Counted from the stretch's first letter, positions 31,582 to 40,500 are shown. The stretch: 64,000 nucleotides of DNA from Mytilus edulis (GCF_963676685.1 NC_092346.1:9734001-9798000); one strand, 5' to 3'. Notes: a model not told the origin generated them from the sequence alone. A program made the numbers and translations.

Positions 31582-34500
31582 ATGTCTAGCACTATATCAG
31601 TTTCCAAGAAAAGAAAATCTACATTAGACACAACTGCTTCATATTCAGTAAATAATGCAAAAAAGAATAAGATGTCGAAATTACCCAAAAGTCCAGTCGA
31701 TGAGTTACATATGATGAGGAAGAAAGAGCAGGTTGAAGAGTCAGATACAACATCTGAGGAAAGTACCGTTGAAGAATCTGAATCTGAAGGTTCAGATGCA
31801 CAAGAGGCTGAAGCTGATGAATTAGTAAGAATTAATAAGTTGCATAAGTTAAACATTTGTACAACTTTACTATACAATGTATATATATATATAGTTTATT
31901 TTCACAAACTGATCCACGCTTAAATAGATTGAATGTTGATTTTTGCTATTTTTAGACATTATATAAAATAACAACTTGTTAGGATTTGTGATTTCTTCTA
32001 CTAGTTAAAATCACTTCTCACAGATATTTGTTTGAAAGGAGTTAATAAAAATATTGTTTGCCTCAGAGTTTAGGAGAAATCTTATTCAATAAACTATATA
32101 CATTTCACAAACTGGCCTTAATGTACATTGAAATTCTATAAGTGAACCAAGACCTGAAGTGGTAGAGTTAAAACAAGTGAATACTGCTAGGTATAATTCC
32201 CAGTTATCTTTAAATAAATAAGAATGTCGCCACACAACTTGCACAAGACAAACTGTCATTGTTCAATTACTCTAAAGATAGACACAAAAAGAAATTATAT
32301 TTTGTACAAAACTTTTGAATTGTACTACATGTATAATATTAAAGTATAAAAAAAAAATCAACAGGAAGCTTCAAGCCTAATGGACAGAACAACAGATTAC
32401 AGTAACATTAACACCTAAGAAAAAACAAATTAGAGGTCATTTTATATGTACAAACAAAGACAAAACCAAAACAAACAACATATGGTCCCAAAATAATATG
32501 TCTTCTCAAGGAATTGCATTCATTATCAAATCAATAGTTATTGTTTTTATTTTTTGTTTTTAGGTAACAGTTAAGCAAGGTAAGTTACATATATATATAT
32601 ATAAGGCATCAGTTAGACAGCAACCAAACAACAAAAATATCCAAAAGGCATCTAGGCAGGAAATGAAAATTACATTTTAAATTTATTAGTTTGATGTATG
32701 GAAGACTTTTCTGTAATTGCCTTCCTCAGAATGCTATTAACGAAAAAGATGCATAAAATGCTTCGAACCTAAAAAGACTAATAAAAACCATATACATGTA
32801 TGGTTAGCTTTGACTCAAGGAGTTGGAACAGAAGATTCTGTATAATTTCTAAATTTGTCAACCACACTGACAGTTTTAAGAAATGTATAATAAACTATGT
32901 CAATTGCAAAACAATGACTATTGAGCTAATAATATTCTTGAGAACTAACCACCAGCAGCTGTATCAAAGTTGTGCTGAAAAATGAAAATAACATTTCATA
33001 AATTTGGTGGCCTGAAGCAGTCTTCTGGATTAACTTTCATCAAAAACATTCCACACCAAATTTAAATGCCAATGATGGGTAAGAAGAGTGATATACTTTC
33101 AAATTAATTTATAGGATATACAATTTGGTTTCAGAATTATCAAATATGTCTTTTGAAGAACTAATACAGTTGAAAGAGAGGCTTGGTTTAAAAGTGTAAG
33201 TATATTATTCTTCATTGAGATAACAAAAAGTCTCCTTGTACTTGAACTTTAACGCATTTGTAAAGTGTAAAAAAATCTTCAGTTCAAATTTTTTATGAAA
33301 ATGTCAAGAACTTAAAAATTCCTGGATTTGTGATTTTCTGTTCGTGGTGATGCTCAAATCATCAGCGTAACAAAGCTGAAATATACTCATGCCAACTCAT
33401 GTTCACTGTGGCCTTTAACCTTGAATTTTGTAATGATATTGATAAAGCTTAACTCATATTCAAATGTATTGTATCTGTGTATTCAAGTTGAATGATTTTA
33501 AAATGAAATAGGTCTAGAAAATTGAACCATATAAAAGTGTACCCACTCCAACTGTGGGCTGATTGGAATTGACAAAATCCAAATAAATTGTAAAATATCA
33601 ATGTTATTTTTTTTTTTTACACAATGTGAATATTTTCAGATATAACCAAGTAGTACATGGAGATAAAGTGAAGAAGCCTACCTCTAAAAGAGTTTTTAAA
33701 AGAGAAAATAAGAACAGGTAACACTATCCAATAGCTAAAAACTCATTAAATTGAAAAAGGCAGTAAATATATTCCTTCCTTATTGGTGCAATTATTAAAT
33801 TTTGTAAATACACAGGACACCTCAAATGTGAAGTGAACAAAATGAATCACTCCATGTGCATCATAACTTTTGATTTTTAACTGGATTTTTGTGACAAAAA
33901 TGTCGGTTATTGATTTGGGAAAATACGCCGGGCGGTCGGTCGGGCGGGCGGCAATCAAATGTTGTCCGTGCATGAACTCATGAACCAATCAACCAAAGCT
34001 TTTAAAATTTTAATATGTTGTTACTGACAACTAAATGAAGGTCAAGTTCAATAATGGCGATTTTGACTCTTACAGTTCAGGAGTTATGGTTCTTGAAAGA
34101 TTGAAAAATGGAGTTTTCAGTCGTGTCTGTGCATTTACGCATGAACAATTCAACCAAAGCTTTTAAAATTTTAATATGTTGTTACTGGTGACAAAATAGA
34201 GGTCAAGTTCAATAATGACGATTTTGACTTTTACCGTTCAGGAGTTATGGTTCTTGAAAGATTGAAAAATGGAGTTTTCAGTCATGTCCGTGCATTTACG
34301 CATGAACTGTTCTACCAAAGCTTCCCAAATTGTAATATGTTGTTACTGATGACAAAATGGAGGTCAAGTTCAATAATGACGATTTTGACTTTTACCGTTC
34401 AGGAGTTATGGTTCTTGAAAGATTGAAAAATGGTGTTTCCAGTCGTGTCCGTGCATTTACGCATGAACCATTCAATCAAAGCTTTTCAAATTTTAATATG

Positions 34501-37500
34501 TTGTTACTGGTGACAAAATAGAGGTCTAGTTCAATAATGACGATTTTGACTTTTACCGTTCAGGAGTTATGGTTCTTGAAAGATCGTAAAATGGCGTTTC
34601 CAGTCGTGTCCGTGCATTTACGCATGAACTGTTCTACTAAAGCTTCCCAAATTTTAATATGTTGTTACTGATGTCAAAATGGAGGTCAAGTTCAATAATG
34701 ACGATTTTGACTTTTACCGTTCAGGAGTTATGGTTCTTGAAAGATTGAAAAATGGTGTTTCCAGTCGTGTCTGTGCATTTTCTCATGAACCATTTAACCA
34801 AAGCTTTTCAAATTTTAATATGTTGTTACTGATGACAAAATAGAGGTCAAGTTCAATAATGATGATTTTGACTTTTACCGTTCAGGAGTTATGGTTCTTG
34901 AAAGATCGTAAAATGGTGTTTCCATTCACATTGTTGCATTTACTCACGAACCATTCAATCTTAGCTTTTCAAATTTTAATATGTTGATACTTATGACAAA
35001 ATGGAGGTCAAATTTGATATTGACGATTTTCACTTTCACCAATCATCAGTAATGGTTCTTGTGATATTGCCAGGACACAAATAAATGTTAATAAATCCGG
35101 TGTGCCTGTCGTTGTGACAGCCTCTTGTCCTCTTATGCTTCCTTCTAAAGTCTCTTTTTTTCCCCTTGTTTAGACAGGACGAAAGATATGCATACTTTCT
35201 ATGACAGTTATAGAAAGTAGCAACTGTACTGACTGTTTTAGCAGTAGTCATGTTCCTTATGTTTGGTTAATAATAGCAGTGAATGTATCCATTTTTCCTG
35301 AATAGTTGAATGATACAAACCAGCACTAATAACAGTCTCTAAAAATTGAAGTAAGGTGAGAGTGTTTGCTCTTCTTTAAAAGTCTCACTGTAACTTTGAG
35401 ATGAATATCAGCAATGAAAGCGCTGTTCCCATGCTTTTTTAATATTTTTCTGTTCATATACTGATTTTGTGTCATGAGGATGGGAAACCCGGTTACCATA
35501 TTCGATTTCTTTTGTGAGTTAGTGATGTCTTTGTGCCATAGAACGGTACATATCTTTCATAATATAAAATGAACAAACACCCATTTGAAATTATTCAACA
35601 CTTTATTAAACTGCAAAATCAACAAATGAATAAAATTATTTTAAAACAGTCTGTCGGATTTTTAAAGAACGATGATAATGTCCCTTCCAGTTTTCGTTTT
35701 TTGCTTCATTCGGGTTGGGGACCTTTACAGGTCAGGTTCGTCGGCCATGTTAAAAACATTATAACATGTATAATAGACTGTTTTGAAATATTTATAGATA
35801 GACCAAAAAAATTAAACGCCAGAGCAAAATGCTACTCCAACTATAAAAAGCACAGTACTGTTAAAGTTTTAATTGGCTGTAGCCCTTTAGGTTCAATAAC
35901 ATTTTTATCTGAAGTATGGGGCGGTAGAGTGTCAGACACCGAAATTGTGAGGTCATCTGGGTTTATAAGTTCAATATATCATCACCCAGGTGATCAAATT
36001 CTTGCAGATAGAGGCTTTACTCTTCAAGACGACTTTGCCAGTGTATGCTCTGCAGAACTTATAATTCCGGCTTTTACAAAGGGAAAATCACAGTTATCTG
36101 CAGAGGAGGTTGAAACATCGCGTAAAATGAGCAGCATCAGAATTCATATTGAGAGAGTGATCGGTTTGATGAAAAACCGGTACAAAATTCTACAAGGGAC
36201 TATACCAATCAATATGCTTAAATCAACCACCGATGAGGCATCCACCAAGAAGCAAGCTCGAATAGACAAACTCGTCCGCATTTGCGGATCATTAACCAAC
36301 ATGGGGGAAGGAATTGTCTACAATGAAGAAAGTGATTGACAATACCTCTAATTTAGAACATCCTTTTTAGAGTGGCTGAATGATAAATGTTTATTATTTT
36401 CAAATATTGACTGTATATACATAGTAAATAAAAAATATATGTAGTTCTAGGTTACATATATGCATGCACTTATGATCAATATCTGACTGTTGTTGAGTTC
36501 AACATTTACAGCTAATTTCCTAAAGCATGTAGAGCAAGACTTAAGTTAACTTGCTTGCTTTGTTTTTATATTGTACAATCATTATGATAACACCCAATTA
36601 AATTCAAATATTATATATACAAGTTTAACTATGCCTTTGTGTCAACAATTATACAAACAAAGCAAACAAGCCAACAAAGTTTTCCTTTACATGCATTAGG
36701 AAATTTGCTGTAATGGTCTCAAAAAACAAAATTATAACAATAAATAACTACAAAAGTTGAACACTGTTATATACGTCTCTGATGGTGACAGGTCCACATG
36801 CAAAAGTATTTATTAAGAGCTAGTAACGGGAATGTTTTTACAGTCTTTACATAACCATTGTCCTTTTGGTATTCTTTTCATTTTTAAACATTTAAGATGA
36901 TACCACTGAGTTTTACATTGTGGGTTGTCACAACCAATCATATTCTCCTTTCCATCATCCTTTGATCGGCAGTAGCAATACAATTTATCATTTCTCAAAG
37001 GTACTTGTTTAATCTTGTTTTCCAATTGTCTCGTCAATAATTCTGTCATCACATGACGAATGTGAAAATCTTTCAGTTTTGTTATCATATCTTTAATGAA
37101 GACGTCATTGCGTAAAATATAAAATATCGCTGTTACCTTTGATGTATAAATTACCAAGTCACATAAATTTACATCATGCACGTACATATGAAGCTGGATT
37201 TGATAGTAATATTTGTGTGTAGTCTTCACCTCTCTGCCATTAGCCACAATGCAGGATGAAGGGTCTTTTACATACTCCTGTAATGTCGATTCCTTGTGAC
37301 TGAACGGACATTTGACCTCTATAACTCTATTTCCGTGACAGGAACAGCTGGCTACAGAGTCAGCACTAGCACCAATAAAAGGGGTTTCTTTAGAAATTAG
37401 GAAGCCTGCAGAACTCATATTAAAATGTTGATGTTGTGTCTTCATGGTTGCACTGTACTGATGCAGCGCAACTTTTTCATTTTCTTTACCCCAATGAATT

Positions 37501-40500
37501 GCAGGTACATGATCAAGTGATTTTGAACTAGGGTTACACAAAGTTTTAAGTAGTGATGGCGCTGGATTGTTGAAATCTGTATGTAAAACACTGTACACTA
37601 CTGAAGATGTTATTCGACCAATGCGTTGTTCATGCCATGTTAAAGATGAGCTCTGTTTTTGAGTAACATCGTAGATATACATGATTGTCTCTTTACTCAT
37701 GCTGTAACTATCATTAATTTCGGAGCATTTTCTGCTTAAATCTATTTTTGTGAAGTCTGCATACTCTGCCTTGTACAGAGATCTAAGACATTGTGGTACA
37801 ATCGGATCTGAGGAAACAGTTTTTTGCCAGTGAAATTTGTCAGAGAAGTTGTCAAATGTACTAAGAACCACATGTTTGCTGTTACAAGCATGCAAAGTTT
37901 GAAGAAGAGTCTGTTGTTCTTGTTGGGTTGATGACAAATGTCGAACTTTTACCTTCTTTGCTTTGTTTATACAGCTGGTTTTATAGAATTGAATGTCTTT
38001 TACGGGCGCAGGCTGTACCTTTTTAACGAAATCAGCATTCCACTTGCATGGTAGCTCAGTGCAAAGTTTAGTGGTATATCCCAGTCTCACAGCGGCTTCT
38101 ACTTTGAAGAGAAGGGCTGCAATATGGGAACATGATTCTGCAAGCCTAAAAAAAAATAGGATTTTTGTTTTGCTATCTAGAGATATATGTGTACAGACTA
38201 TTATGACAAGTTTTATACATAAAAAAATATTGCGACCTTTTTTCCATTACTTTTTTCCTGTCTTTACATTATCATACACAAAATTTGCAACAGTCGTAAG
38301 CAAATCAAAAAAAAAAAAAGAGAACAACCTTCAAAGTAACCTGTATGCATAATAAATATAAATGATTTCAATACGATTTTAAAACCTACCCTGCCATGCA
38401 ATTGCAGTGAGCCACGGCTACTGAACCATCTGCAGAAAGGGCAACCCATGGGTGATGAGGTTCCTCGTTCAGTCTTTGTGACGGCCTAACATCTGATTTC
38501 AGTATAGTGTATGCACTGGTGGCAGGCTTATAGCTGTAAACTGTCTGAACCCATCCTGACTGAAAATAGTTGTGGGCATCCAAACTCTTATAGGATTTCA
38601 TACTTGCTCGGGTAAAAATGCCTGAAAATCATACATTGACTAACATAAGAACAAGTCCTTGCGGCTGGGCATATTTACTGTCCTATATTCAATTTAAATT
38701 TAATAGGTTCCAATATTAACCTTTTTAAAAAGTTCACTCTACATATGGTACACATATATGTCAAGATACCGGTATAAGCAAAAACAATTTAAATTACTAG
38801 AAACAAAAAAAATAACAGATTTTTGTAAAAAGGGGAAAGCTAAAAGAATTTATTCTGTTCCATAGTACCTTAAGCATACAAGGAGCTTTGTACATTTTTT
38901 TGTACATTTTTTAATTTTCAGTATAACTGACAAATATTTTAAAACACATGTTTAAAACATTTAATACGTAACCTAGTATTATTCCTAATAATTTAAAGTA
39001 ATATTCTGTAACAGTCTTAAAAGTTATTCACTTTTTATTTTAATCTATATCTTCAGCTTCATGTCATTTTAAAAACTTGACACATATCATAATTATAACT
39101 TCGTGTATTAATTAAAGTTTACATGGACACTAAACGAATATTAAATCTATCCTTTCACACCTGACCTGGGAGGAAATCACCCACTGTGCAAAGTTTATTG
39201 CCAAAGATGTGTCATCTCATCTTCATTTATAACAACTTCTATCATGGTCCGCGTCCTTTACATTTAATTTTTTTTTAAATCAAACTTAAAAGAACAGAAT
39301 TATAACCAAATTAACTTTGCTACACAATTAATCTATATTACATATGTATCAATCTGTGTTTAGTTCTAAATAATATCGCCGTGAATATATTTTTTTTCAT
39401 ATTTTGTTAGTTATTTCAAGGATGTGTTTATTATGTTTCTGCTTACTTTTAATACACAGAGACATATATATGCCTCATCTTTTCATACTAATATTTCACT
39501 GCATAAATCGGTACACCCTTATTCTTCAAAACCGGAAAAAAATAATTAAAGTTATCTATAGGTGTGCTCAGCTTAATAATTTTTAATTCTAAATACCTGG
39601 CGTGTCAATTAAATAGGAATACACATCTCCAAACTGGAGATCTGGCCAACATGATGGGTTATTTTTCCAAACACCTGCAGGGAACTTGTATGGACATTCA
39701 TCACTGTTAATTAACACTAATTTGGTACTATAACGACCTTGTGCCACACTGTCTAGCTTATCAAAATAATTGTATGCCATCTAATTACTGTTTACACCTT
39801 AATTAATAAATGTAAAGTGTTATCTCAATTAACTGACCATTAGCGGTGATTGGAGTATCTAGGGAAAAGCGTCACCTACAGTGATGCCCGGATGCTGTAA
39901 CTACCGGCTGCTACGTCACGCCGGATAACAGAATAAATTTTCGTTCGCCAAAATGGCGATTGCAACTGAATTTTTATTAGCCACAAAATAAAATCATTCG
40001 CCCATGGTGAGTGTGGCGACCTTTACCGCTAACACAGACTGAATCTCAAGATTATTTGAAAGTGAAGCTTGTACATTTGGTAACATAATTGGTCCCATCA
40101 ACACATTATGATGGACTACAGTAGACTATTGATAACTACTATGGTAACAGAAAATATCCTTACAAATTACAGTCATTAAATCACACATGATATGCATTTC
40201 TAGATTTTTAAGCAAACAATAGTTTATAAATGAATTGATCTATTTATAGACCTATGGAAATGTCATCTAAAAGACCAGTGAGGTTAAGCAAAGAAAGTGA
40301 TCCAGCTAAGAAGAAGGTAATTTATCTTATATTTTAATACTTTAATACGTCAAGTTGTGATTATTGTTTCTGATAATAGAAATTTCTTTTCAAATTTCAA
40401 GACTAGAATTAAATGCAACAAGATCAGATGACTATTAACAAATAGACCCCAATTTTATATCAACTATAAGAATAAATGATTTACCAGACATAAACCAAAA

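What the first reader, a model, noticed from the sequence alone, without database searches (positions are those of the whole stretch)
35750..39932. Two-gene transposon coupling a Harbinger-type DDE transposase with a SWIM-YqaJ exonuclease-PHD fusion
Seen: a DDE transposase core (+) lies tail-to-tail with an uninterrupted, spliced 582-aa gene (-), which the ORF track shows only as three fragments. Established: pairing a Harbinger-like DDE protein with a YqaJ (lambda-exonuclease/alkaline-nuclease-like PD-(D/E)XK) protein is the ISL2EU architecture, and as far as I know the second protein's role is not established. Inference: a second nuclease of the phage-recombination type, together with a SWIM finger and a histone-reader module, suggests a two-component system. 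It could resect or process DNA ends and steer integration or donor-site repair by chromatin state, unlike canonical Harbinger, whose helper is a Myb/SANT DNA-binding protein.
Basis: partly seen in the sequence, partly recalled or inferred. Interest (0 to 1): 0.85.

Follow-up and report, generated by a model that had tools for sequence, protein, structure and literature searches.

The report
Truncated ISL2EU transposon copy in mussel
This is a broken copy of a known two-gene "jumping gene" type (ISL2EU) in the blue mussel genome; its second gene, a spliced nuclease with a histone-reading finger, is intact and its family is transcribed, but what that protein does remains untested.

Summary
Window 35762-39932 is one of three 98-99% identical copies of a ~6.2 kb ISL2EU DNA transposon in a Mytilus edulis assembly. 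A DDE_Tnp_4 transposase fragment (+) lies tail-to-tail with a three-exon, 582-codon gene (-). That gene carries a SWIM CxCx7CxH motif, a lambda-exonuclease/YqaJ nuclease with its catalytic D..ExK, and an ING-type PHD finger. Transcript-like contigs from two runs confirm both GT-AG introns.

The window copy is dead. It lacks the left 1976 bp: the left inverted repeat and transposase residues 1-335 of 526, which include the THAP and HTH domains. It keeps only the right 11-nt repeat plus AT. The most complete copy (C7) has TCTGTTATCCG inverted repeats flanked by AT on both sides.

At 24 of the 30 best ORF2 loci in this genome a DDE gene sits convergently within 5 kb. The two genes also show the same family groupings.

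The THAP-DDE plus YqaJ architecture, with its AT duplication, is already published (Han 2014, 2015). Only the SWIM and ING-PHD details are missing from the papers I could search. The proposed function (end resection, chromatin-guided targeting) is plausible but untested.

The scan had already noted the same element type on two other pieces of this genome, and the PHD finger on this window. Interest is low to moderate.

The parts
35762..39932 (.). 5'-truncated copy (4171 bp of about 6182 bp) of an ISL2EU transposon family. The left 1976 bp are missing, including the left terminal repeat.
   Evidence: blastn against the C12 and C7 copies gives 98.8% and 97.6% identity over 35762-39935. The true left end was defined on the C7 copy.
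35764..36339 (+). C-terminal fragment of the transposase: the DDE_Tnp_4 catalytic core, equal to residues about 336-526 of the 526-aa protein, plus the stop. The THAP, coiled-coil and HTH_Tnp_4 parts are absent.
   Evidence: Pfam DDE_Tnp_4 at E 2.4e-49. P0119 from M. trossulus is 98% identical, 526 aa, and carries THAP+HTH_Tnp_4+DDE_Tnp_4. Upstream of 35762 the sequence is unrelated to the other copies.
36506..36713 (.). Nested ~210-bp MITE-like element with 37-nt inverted ends, in the spacer between the two 3' ends. It is present in all three copies.
   Evidence: Inverted repeat I1. The own-genome DNA search found 1515 first-look candidates. Contig depth and loose ends are high at 36505 and 36716.
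36813..38145 (-). ORF2 exon 3 (443 whole codons plus stop). It carries the second half of the SWIM motif (CxH), the lambda-exonuclease/YqaJ nuclease and the ING-type PHD finger.
   Evidence: The splice acceptor is confirmed by the joint 38144/38389 (cut +1) in X1 and X3.
37176..37637 (-). YqaJ / lambda-exonuclease-type PD-(D/E)XK nuclease core. The D (SAD) and ExK (IEVKCP) are kept, as is the Arg of WHEQRIGRITSS.
   Evidence: Pfam YqaJ at 1.1e-19. The D, E, K and R columns are invariant in 24 homologues and kept in the window. Foldseek matches a homologue model to lambda exonuclease at E 3e-9.
36840..36977 (-). ING/Yng-type PHD finger (C4HC3). The aromatic cage residues are kept: Y before the first Cys, and W in QWYH.
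   Evidence: All of the 20 best PDB sequence hits are ING/Yng/Png2/Pho23 PHD fingers at E 1.7e-13 to 1.9e-6, 18 of them at 6e-10 or better, against 1e-3 or worse for other PHDs. Structural match to ING-H3K4me3 complexes: TM 0.9, rmsd 1.0-1.5 A.
38146..38389 (-). ORF2 intron 2 (244 nt, GT..AG). It splits the SWIM motif and a Gly codon (GG|G).
   Evidence: skipped in contigs of X1 and X3.
38390..38621 (-). ORF2 exon 2. It ends with the first half of the SWIM motif (AHCNCMAG).
   Evidence: CxCx7CxH is invariant in 24 full-length homologues.
38622..39596 (-). ORF2 intron 1 (975 nt, GT..AG).
   Evidence: skipped in X3 contig 11.
39597..39780 (-). ORF2 exon 1 (ATG at 39780; 61 codons plus 1 nt).
   Evidence: The homologous exon is in the C1 paralogue and at the N-termini of the database proteins.
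39922..39932 (+). Right terminal inverted repeat CGGATAACAGA, the reverse complement of the left repeat TCTGTTATCCG on the C7 copy. No left partner exists anywhere in the window.
   Evidence: a single match in 64 kb on both strands.
39933..39934 (.). AT dinucleotide next to the right repeat. This is the expected ISL2EU target-site duplication.
   Evidence: AT flanks both ends of the C7 copy and the right ends of all three copies. An AT duplication is published for ISL2EU (PMC4482050).

Best explanation
Shown: window 35762-39932 is a 5'-truncated, immobile copy of a young ISL2EU (PHIS superfamily) cut-and-paste DNA transposon of Mytilus. The full element is about 6.2 kb. It has 11-nt terminal inverted repeats (TCTGTTATCCG), inserts at AT and duplicates it, and carries two convergent genes. 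Gene 1 is a two-exon THAP + HTH_Tnp_4 + DDE_Tnp_4 transposase of 526 aa. Gene 2 (ORF2) is a three-exon, 582-codon protein with an N-terminal SWIM zinc-finger module, a lambda-exonuclease/YqaJ PD-(D/E)XK nuclease and a C-terminal ING-type PHD finger. The window copy keeps an intact ORF2 and only the last 191 codons of the transposase. The family is transcribed and spliced. Inferred, with my own odds: the THAP/HTH part of the transposase recognises the element ends and the DDE core cuts and pastes at AT. ORF2 is a catalytically active 5'->3' exonuclease that works on 5'-phosphorylated double-strand ends made during transposition (about 0.7). Its most likely job is to resect the donor break, the excised ends or both, so that repair goes through homology and the donor copy is restored (about 0.4). 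The ING-type PHD finger probably tethers it, and perhaps the whole complex, to H3K4me3 nucleosomes at active promoters (about 0.6 for the binding, less for integration targeting). SWIM would supply DNA or protein contacts.
For: Identity and limits come from three 98-99% copies with different flanks. TIRs and AT on both sides are seen on the C7 copy, and the right TIR plus AT in the window. Transposase domains: DDE_Tnp_4 at 2.4e-49; P0119, 98% identical, carries THAP, HTH_Tnp_4 and DDE_Tnp_4; the THAP exon is present in the C7 and C1 copies. ORF2: Pfam YqaJ and PHD; SWIM CxCx7CxH, D..ExK and R317 are invariant in 24 homologues from molluscs, echinoderms, cnidarians and ticks; 63 of 66 conserved columns are kept in the window. 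Structure: lambda exonuclease at E 3e-9, LHK-Exo at TM 0.76, and ING PHD-H3K4me3 complexes at TM about 0.9. ING/Yng PHDs score E 1e-13 to 1e-10 by sequence. Splicing is confirmed by contigs of two runs. Linkage: 24 of the 30 best ORF2 loci have a convergent DDE gene within 5 kb, and the distance matrices of the two genes agree (r = 0.84, 0 of 5000 permutations reach it). The published description of ISL2EU matches: THAP/HTH-DDE plus a YqaJ ORF, with an AT duplication.
Against: No functional data exist for any ISL2EU ORF2 in the papers I could search, so every mechanistic step is inference. The TIR starts with TC, not the 'usually GG' reported for ISL2EU. The target context A|AT|T is only partly matched, and only one complete copy could be examined. 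Three columns conserved in at least 22 of the 24 homologues differ in this family (L447V, Q460H, P508T). No copy of this family in this assembly has an intact transposase. In C12 even ORF2 has a stop. Differences between copies look neutral (2 syn/9 non and 9 syn/10 non), so this particular copy is decaying. Runs X1 and X3 are only guessed to be RNA. Raw RNA reads were few and also cover intron 1.
Confidence: 0.8

Rival explanations
1. ORF2 is the second catalytic subunit of a heteromeric transposase, analogous to Tn7 TnsA (PD-(D/E)XK) working with TnsB (DDE). The DDE protein would cut the 3' strands, and the YqaJ nuclease would cut or remove the 5' strands at the element ends. ORF2 would then be required for excision itself.
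For: A PD-(D/E)XK nuclease with an intact active site is strictly linked to the DDE gene across deeply diverged families. PD-(D/E)XK enzymes are known to act in transposon excision, e.g. TnsA (PMC3424549). From my own knowledge, the related herpesvirus alkaline nucleases that Foldseek also matches have endonuclease as well as exonuclease activity.
Against: The closest structures and motifs are those of processive end-dependent exonucleases (lambda Exo, LHK-Exo), including the conserved Arg that I equate with lambda Exo's 5'-phosphate contact (the residue identification is from memory). There is no similarity to TnsA. Related PIF/Harbinger and Spy elements transpose or exist without such a nuclease. 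The complex prediction could not be run.
Confidence: 0.15
2. ORF2 acts mainly as a non-catalytic helper, like the Myb-like protein of Harbinger. It would provide nuclear import, binding of the element ends (SWIM) and chromatin tethering (PHD). The nuclease would be dispensable for transposition, or serve another purpose such as defence against competing DNA.
For: [quoted passage not shown] Two of its three modules are binding modules.
Against: The catalytic D, E and K, the conserved Arg and the QxQ helix are invariant or nearly so across phyla. That is not expected for a vestigial nuclease.
Confidence: 0.2
3. The intact 582-codon gene in the window is a domesticated host gene derived from a transposon, not part of a transposon remnant.
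For: ORF2 is intact here while the neighbouring transposase is destroyed. Spliced transcripts of the family exist.
Against: It lies inside the homology block bounded by the element's terminal repeat. Three 98-99% copies sit at unrelated sites. Differences between copies are not biased towards synonymous changes, and one copy has a premature stop. The expressed contigs differ from the window copy at several sites (table 3).
Confidence: 0.03

Closest known systems
ISL2EU group of the PHIS (PIF/Harbinger-ISL2EU-Spy) superfamily (Repbase; Han et al. 2014 PMC4122938; Han et al. 2015 PMC4482050)
   Same: It has a THAP + HTH + DDE transposase, a second ORF with a YqaJ exonuclease domain, an AT duplication and short TIRs, and it occurs in animals. 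This is the family the element belongs to.
   Different: The TIR begins with TC rather than the usual GG. The SWIM module and ING-type PHD finger of ORF2, and its conserved three-exon structure, are not mentioned in the papers I could read. The window copy is truncated.
PIF/Harbinger transposons (e.g. Harbinger3_DR, PIF, Pong)
   Same: They have a related DDE_Tnp_4 catalytic core with an HTH, a two-gene organisation, and a preference for AT-rich targets.
   Different: The Harbinger helper is a Myb/SANT DNA-binding protein without nuclease. Its duplication is 3 bp (TWA), and its transposase has no THAP domain.
Spy transposons
   Same: They are the sister clade of ISL2EU transposases, found in invertebrates including bivalves.
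   Different: Spy has a single ORF, makes no duplication and inserts in AAATTT. None of these apply here.
Lambda exonuclease / YqaJ / herpesvirus alkaline nucleases / mimivirus R354
   Same: They share the fold and motifs: W..QR.G.iTaS, SPDG-like D, ExKcP and Y..QvQ.
   Different: In phages the nuclease pairs with a single-strand annealing protein, and none is encoded here. Here it is fused to SWIM and PHD modules and has extra invariant cysteines.
ING/Yng family PHD fingers (H3K4me3 readers)
   Same: The sequence is 40-50% identical, with the C4HC3 ligands and the Tyr/Trp cage positions kept. The structural match has rmsd of about 1 A.
   Different: It is attached to a transposon nuclease rather than to an acetyltransferase or deacetylase scaffold subunit. 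Binding has not been measured.
Tn7 TnsA/TnsB; chromodomain integrases of chromoviruses (working analogies only)
   Same: Tn7 pairs a PD-(D/E)XK nuclease with a DDE transposase. Chromoviruses carry a histone-mark reader on a mobile-element enzyme.
   Different: There is no homology to TnsA.

Membership tests
ISL2EU | DDE transposase of the IS5/PIF type with an N-terminal THAP domain and an HTH | tested here: met
   DDE_Tnp_4 at 2.4e-49 in the window. The 98%-identical P0119 carries THAP (PF05485), HTH_Tnp_4 (PF13613) and DDE_Tnp_4. The THAP exon is present in the C7 and C1 copies. The window copy itself has lost these N-terminal parts.
ISL2EU | Second ORF encoding a YqaJ exonuclease-domain protein | tested here: met
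   Pfam YqaJ at 1.1e-19. It is linked convergently to the DDE gene at 24 of the 30 best loci.
ISL2EU | 2-bp AT target-site duplication | tested here: met
   AT sits on both sides of the one copy that has both ends (C7). AT follows the right end in all three copies. This rests on n = 1 for both ends, and no empty site was examined.
ISL2EU | Target context A|AT|T, and TIRs that usually start with GG | tested here: inconclusive
   C7 flanks read T-AT...AT-T. The window and C12 right flanks read AT-A. The TIR starts with TC. The paper words this feature as 'usually', so it is not decisive.
ISL2EU | Transposase falls in the ISL2EU clade, with its six clade-specific conserved residues (Han 2014, fig. 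4) | not testable with these tools
   Repbase reference sequences and the figure are not available here.
PIF/Harbinger (strict sense) | Myb/SANT helper ORF and a 3-bp TWA duplication | tested here: not met
   The helper is SWIM-YqaJ-PHD, and the duplication is AT.
Spy | Single ORF, no duplication, insertion in AAATTT | tested here: not met
   The element has two ORFs and AT at both ends, and its flanks are not AAA/TTT.
Lambda exonuclease / YqaJ (PF09588) nucleases | PD-(D/E)XK fold with catalytic D...ExK and an N-terminal conserved Arg motif | tested here: met
   The Pfam score of 71.6 bits exceeds the cut-off of 22. Foldseek gives lambda Exo at E 3e-9 and TM 0.64, and LHK-Exo at TM 0.76. D404, E418, K420 and R317 are invariant and kept in the window. 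Activity itself has not been tested.
ING-type PHD finger | C4HC3 zinc ligands plus the Tyr/Trp (and Met) H3K4me3 cage positions | tested here: met
   The alignments to Png2 and Yng1 show YC.C, MIGCD and W.H kept. The structural match to ING1/2/3/4/5-H3K4me3 complexes is TM 0.86-0.91. Which residues form the cage is from my memory of the ING2 and Yng1 structures. Binding has not been tested.
SWIM zinc finger | CxCxnCxH signature after a beta-rich segment | tested here: met
   CxCx7CxH is invariant in 24 homologues and present in the window, split between exons 2 and 3. Pfam SWIM did not score at E <= 0.05 on the full-length homologues. UniRef labels one homologue a SWIM-type domain protein. There is a weak Foldseek hit to ZSWIM8.

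The most novel reading that the evidence does not exclude
ISL2EU elements could be two-enzyme transposons in which a lambda-Exo-type nuclease is parked on H3K4me3 nucleosomes by an ING-type PHD finger. There it would process the breaks made by the DDE transposase. It might bias donor-site repair to homologous recombination, so that a cut-and-paste element effectively replicates. Or it might act as a TnsA-like second-strand nuclease while directing insertions to active promoters. Either way it would be an accessory-protein mechanism not described for any eukaryotic DNA transposon.
Probability: 0.2. Interest if true: 0.65.

Novelty: new member of a known kind. Interest (0 to 1): 0.27.

Why it matters
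The role of the ISL2EU second protein has not been settled, to my knowledge, since the group was defined. The sequence evidence here sharpens the question. The nuclease active site, a SWIM motif and an ING-type histone-reader finger are conserved from cnidarians to molluscs and ticks, and they have stayed linked to the transposase. The Mytilus family is young, transcribed and correctly spliced. A near-identical intact transposase is annotated in M. trossulus, so natural gene pairs exist for a direct transposition test. As a genome feature, however, this locus is an ordinary decaying copy of a described transposon type.

Tried and rejected
1. TIR search inside the window found nothing, because the copy is truncated. 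My first boundary for the 'full' element, the left end of the C12 copy at TCCTGTTG, was wrong. C12 is itself truncated inside the transposase intron. The true left end came from the C7 copy and from left-end fragments elsewhere.

2. Complex prediction on the transposase (P0119) with ORF2 exon 3 was not folded, under a tool rule about pairing chains. It gives no evidence either way.

3. The look-up of encoding contigs, meant to check the two-gene linkage in M. trossulus, Lytechinus and Hydra, was closed. Linkage across phyla therefore rests on the literature, and on the deeply diverged families within this one genome.

Further copies, empty sites and the ends of the C1 family could not be read.

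5. Pfam did not detect SWIM in the full-length homologues at E <= 0.05. The motif was established by alignment instead.

Each exon was searched by reference. The SWIM motif that spans the exon 2/3 junction was judged on full-length database homologues and by adding the exon peptides separately to their alignment.

7. Domestication of ORF2 was considered and rejected, because the substitution pattern is neutral and one copy has a stop.

8. Strand assignment of the raw RNA reads was left open. In both stranded libraries, reads over both genes have the first mate on +, the library chemistry is unknown and depth is only a few reads.


Full report
WHAT IS THERE. The window is AT-rich (about 32% G+C). 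It belongs to a 1.37-Gb assembly of 14 large contigs plus scaffolds. The assembly is Mytilus edulis: the protein P0120, labelled M. edulis, sits on a contig of 93,447,462 bp, which is the length of contig C7 of this genome.

Pfam finds DDE_Tnp_4 (E 2.4e-49) in the + strand ORF 35569-36339. In the - strand ORF 36813-38090 it finds YqaJ (1.1e-19), Viral_alk_exo (5e-9) and PHD (1.9e-5).

Reading the - strand gives a three-exon gene. Exon 1 is 39780-39597, exon 2 is 38621-38390 and exon 3 is 38145-36813. That makes 1749 nt, or 582 codons plus the stop. The introns are GT..AG, 975 and 244 nt long.

Each exon was handled by reference.

SPLICING AND EXPRESSION. Contigs from two public runs of different studies (X1, X3) skip 38146-38389. 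X3 also skips 38622-39596, within a single 1905-nt contig that covers all three exons. These two runs are only guessed to be RNA, but contigs that lack both GT-AG introns are best explained as cDNA.

In one raw RNA-seq run, six reads begin exactly at 38145, the exon 3 boundary. The contig for the transposase runs on, beyond 35762, into the sequence that the C12 copy has there. Several single-base differences separate the contigs from the window. So the transcripts come from other copies of the family, not demonstrably from this one.

A paralogous family on C1 is 48% identical in ORF2 and 70% identical in the DDE core. It has the same three exons with the junctions at the same positions. That is independent comparative support for the gene model.

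LIMITS OF THE ELEMENT AND STATE OF THE COPY. The genome holds three 98-99% identical copies: this one, C12:27093069-27098501 and C7:72352046-72359504.

Homology of the window copy starts abruptly at 35762 and ends at 39935. The C12 copy extends 1236 bp further left and the C7 copy a further 740 bp. Left-end fragments elsewhere in the genome all start at the same base as the C7 copy.

On C7 the ends are TCTGTTATCCG ... CGGATAACAGA, an 11-nt perfect inverted repeat with AT on both sides. The window has the right repeat at 39922-39932 followed by AT. It has no second copy of that repeat anywhere in its 64 kb.

The native element is about 6182 bp. None of the three copies is intact.
- The window copy lacks the left 1976 bp. 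That removes the left repeat, the THAP exon, the intron and transposase residues up to about 335 of 526.
- The C12 copy starts inside the transposase intron and has a stop in ORF2 exon 2.
- The C7 copy has a 1277-bp insertion at about transposase residue 161.

The ATG at 35569 of the listed 256-aa ORF lies in unrelated DNA. Differences between copies in ORF2 are 2 synonymous to 9 non-synonymous (window against C12) and 9 to 10 (window against C7). That is neutral decay, not a domesticated gene.

THE TWO PROTEINS. The M. trossulus protein P0119 is 98% identical to the family's transposase and 526 aa long. It carries THAP, HTH_Tnp_4 and DDE_Tnp_4, and its first 65 residues map to an upstream exon in the C7 copy.

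ORF2 has 118 database relatives at E <= 1e-5. They come from molluscs, echinoderms, Hydra, ticks, insects, an annelid and fish. Ten full-length ones all show YqaJ followed by a C-terminal PHD-type finger.

In alignments of 11 and 24 full-length proteins these features are invariant: the SWIM signature CxCx7CxH, the nuclease D404/E418/K420, and R317 of the W..QR.GRITAS motif. I equate R317 with the 5'-phosphate-binding Arg28 of lambda exonuclease, from memory. The PHD ligands are invariant or nearly so. The window protein keeps 63 of 66 conserved columns.

An AlphaFold2 model of the Mytilus paralogue P0005 (mean pLDDT 80) matches several structures:
- lambda exonuclease at E 3e-9;
- LHK-Exo at TM 0.76;
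- herpesvirus alkaline nucleases;
- ING1-5 PHD fingers bound to H3K4me3 at TM about 0.9 and rmsd 1.0-1.5 A.

By sequence, the 20 best solved-structure hits of exon 3 are all ING/Yng/Png2/Pho23 PHD fingers, at E 1.7e-13 to 1.9e-6. Other PHD fingers score 1e-3 or worse. The Tyr before the first Cys, the Met of MIGCD and the Trp of QWYH are kept. So the finger is specifically of the ING type.

The nuclease core aligns weakly but motif by motif with mimivirus R354 (E 0.007) and lambda Exo (E 0.06).

ARE THE TWO GENES A UNIT? At 24 of the 30 best ORF2 loci in this genome a DDE_Tnp_4 hit lies within 5 kb, and it is always convergent. ORF2 identity across these loci ranges from 100% down to about 30%.

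For 12 elements where both cores could be extracted, the same four groupings appear in both distance matrices. The matrices correlate at r = 0.84, and 0 of 5000 permutations reach that value. ORF2 diverges faster than the DDE core.

COMPARISON WITH WHAT IS KNOWN. Han et al. 2014 (PMC4122938), Han et al. 2015 (PMC4482050) and PMC9179366 describe ISL2EU as follows:
- a transposase with DDE, HTH and THAP domains;
- a second ORF with a YqaJ exonuclease domain;
- an AT duplication, with target A|AT|T;
- TIRs of 6-259 bp, usually starting with GG.

The element meets the coding and duplication criteria. The GG start is not met, and the target context is only partly met. It fails the criteria of strict PIF/Harbinger (Myb-like helper, TWA duplication) and of Spy (one ORF, no duplication).

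Full-text searches for ISL2EU or YqaJ together with SWIM or PHD found no paper that describes these two modules in the ISL2EU helper. Public databases already label relatives as PHD-type or SWIM-type domain proteins. No paper found reports a functional test of the helper.

HOW IT MOST LIKELY WORKS (INFERENCE). The THAP/HTH-DDE transposase recognises the short terminal repeats and carries out cut-and-paste at AT.

The helper looks like a working, end-dependent 5'->3' exonuclease. Its whole catalytic apparatus, including the conserved Arg noted above, is conserved across phyla. The simplest use of such an enzyme by a cut-and-paste element is to resect the double-strand breaks it creates. That commits the donor break to homology-directed repair from the sister chromatid and so restores the element.

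The ING-type finger most likely binds H3K4me3, which would place the protein at active promoters. SWIM would provide DNA or protein contacts.

There are two rivals. One is a TnsA-like role in second-strand cleavage. The other is a mainly non-catalytic helper role, like the Harbinger Myb-like protein. I could not test for a physical interaction: the complex job was not folded.

VERDICT. The classification as ISL2EU is supported. The copy is a truncated remnant. The functional idea is reasonable but untested, and the architecture is already published.

The scan had already noted the same element type on two other pieces of this genome (s1-832406, s1-832648), and the PHD finger on this window (s1-834762). 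What this work adds is modest:
- the exact ends, terminal repeats and duplication of a Mytilus family;
- the ING-type identity of the PHD finger and the invariant SWIM motif;
- confirmation of splicing;
- evidence that the two genes have been inherited together.

Noticed in passing
window 33963-35067: A tandem array of about seven 161-bp units (83-92% identical) lies just left of the truncated element. Each unit pair carries a short ORF (MEVKFNNDDFDFYRSG...). The 60 bp after the array (35068-35130) recur at 95-98% identity at dozens of sites, so the array looks like the interior of a high-copy repeat.
   Followed up: partly
window 36506-36713: A ~210-bp MITE-like element with 37-nt inverted ends is nested between the 3' ends of the two genes. 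It is present in all three copies, so it was acquired before the family spread. It has very many copies genome-wide (1515 first-look candidates). Transcript contigs of both genes end in or next to it.
   Followed up: partly
L062/L065 (G000:C7:72356776-72358053): The C7 copy has a 1277-bp insertion in the transposase exon, with a 7-bp overlap of the flanking alignment. This may be a 7-bp duplication from another transposon. Left of the C7 copy lies a different ~1.6-kb repeat with dozens of ~80% identical copies.
   Followed up: no
ORF2 nuclease core, window about 37176-37400 (- strand); columns C409, C411, C421, C469, H380, H451 of alignment A2: Several cysteines and histidines inside the nuclease domain (CxC before the ExK strand, the C of EVKCP, a later C, and two H) are invariant or nearly so across phyla. 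As far as I recall lambda exonuclease has only the C of its ELKCP motif. They may form an extra metal site.
   Followed up: no
window 35968-38138, raw RNA runs X21 and X24: In both stranded libraries, the few reads over the transposase fragment and over ORF2 have the same first-mate orientation, although the genes are convergent. One of the two genes is therefore covered by antisense reads. Intron 1 of ORF2 is also covered in X21. Depth is too low, and the library chemistry unknown, to interpret this.
   Followed up: no
G000:C1:12556689-12562466 (L063/L066): This is a single copy of a sister family, 70% identical in the DDE core and 48% in ORF2. It has an open THAP exon, an open 450-codon transposase exon and all three ORF2 exons open. 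It may be an autonomous element. Its ends could not be defined.
   Followed up: partly
one search hit list (P0090, P0097, P0099, P0102 and others): One lineage of ORF2 relatives carries an N-terminal SAP domain (PF02037) before the YqaJ nuclease. The DNA-binding front end of the helper is therefore exchangeable.
   Followed up: no
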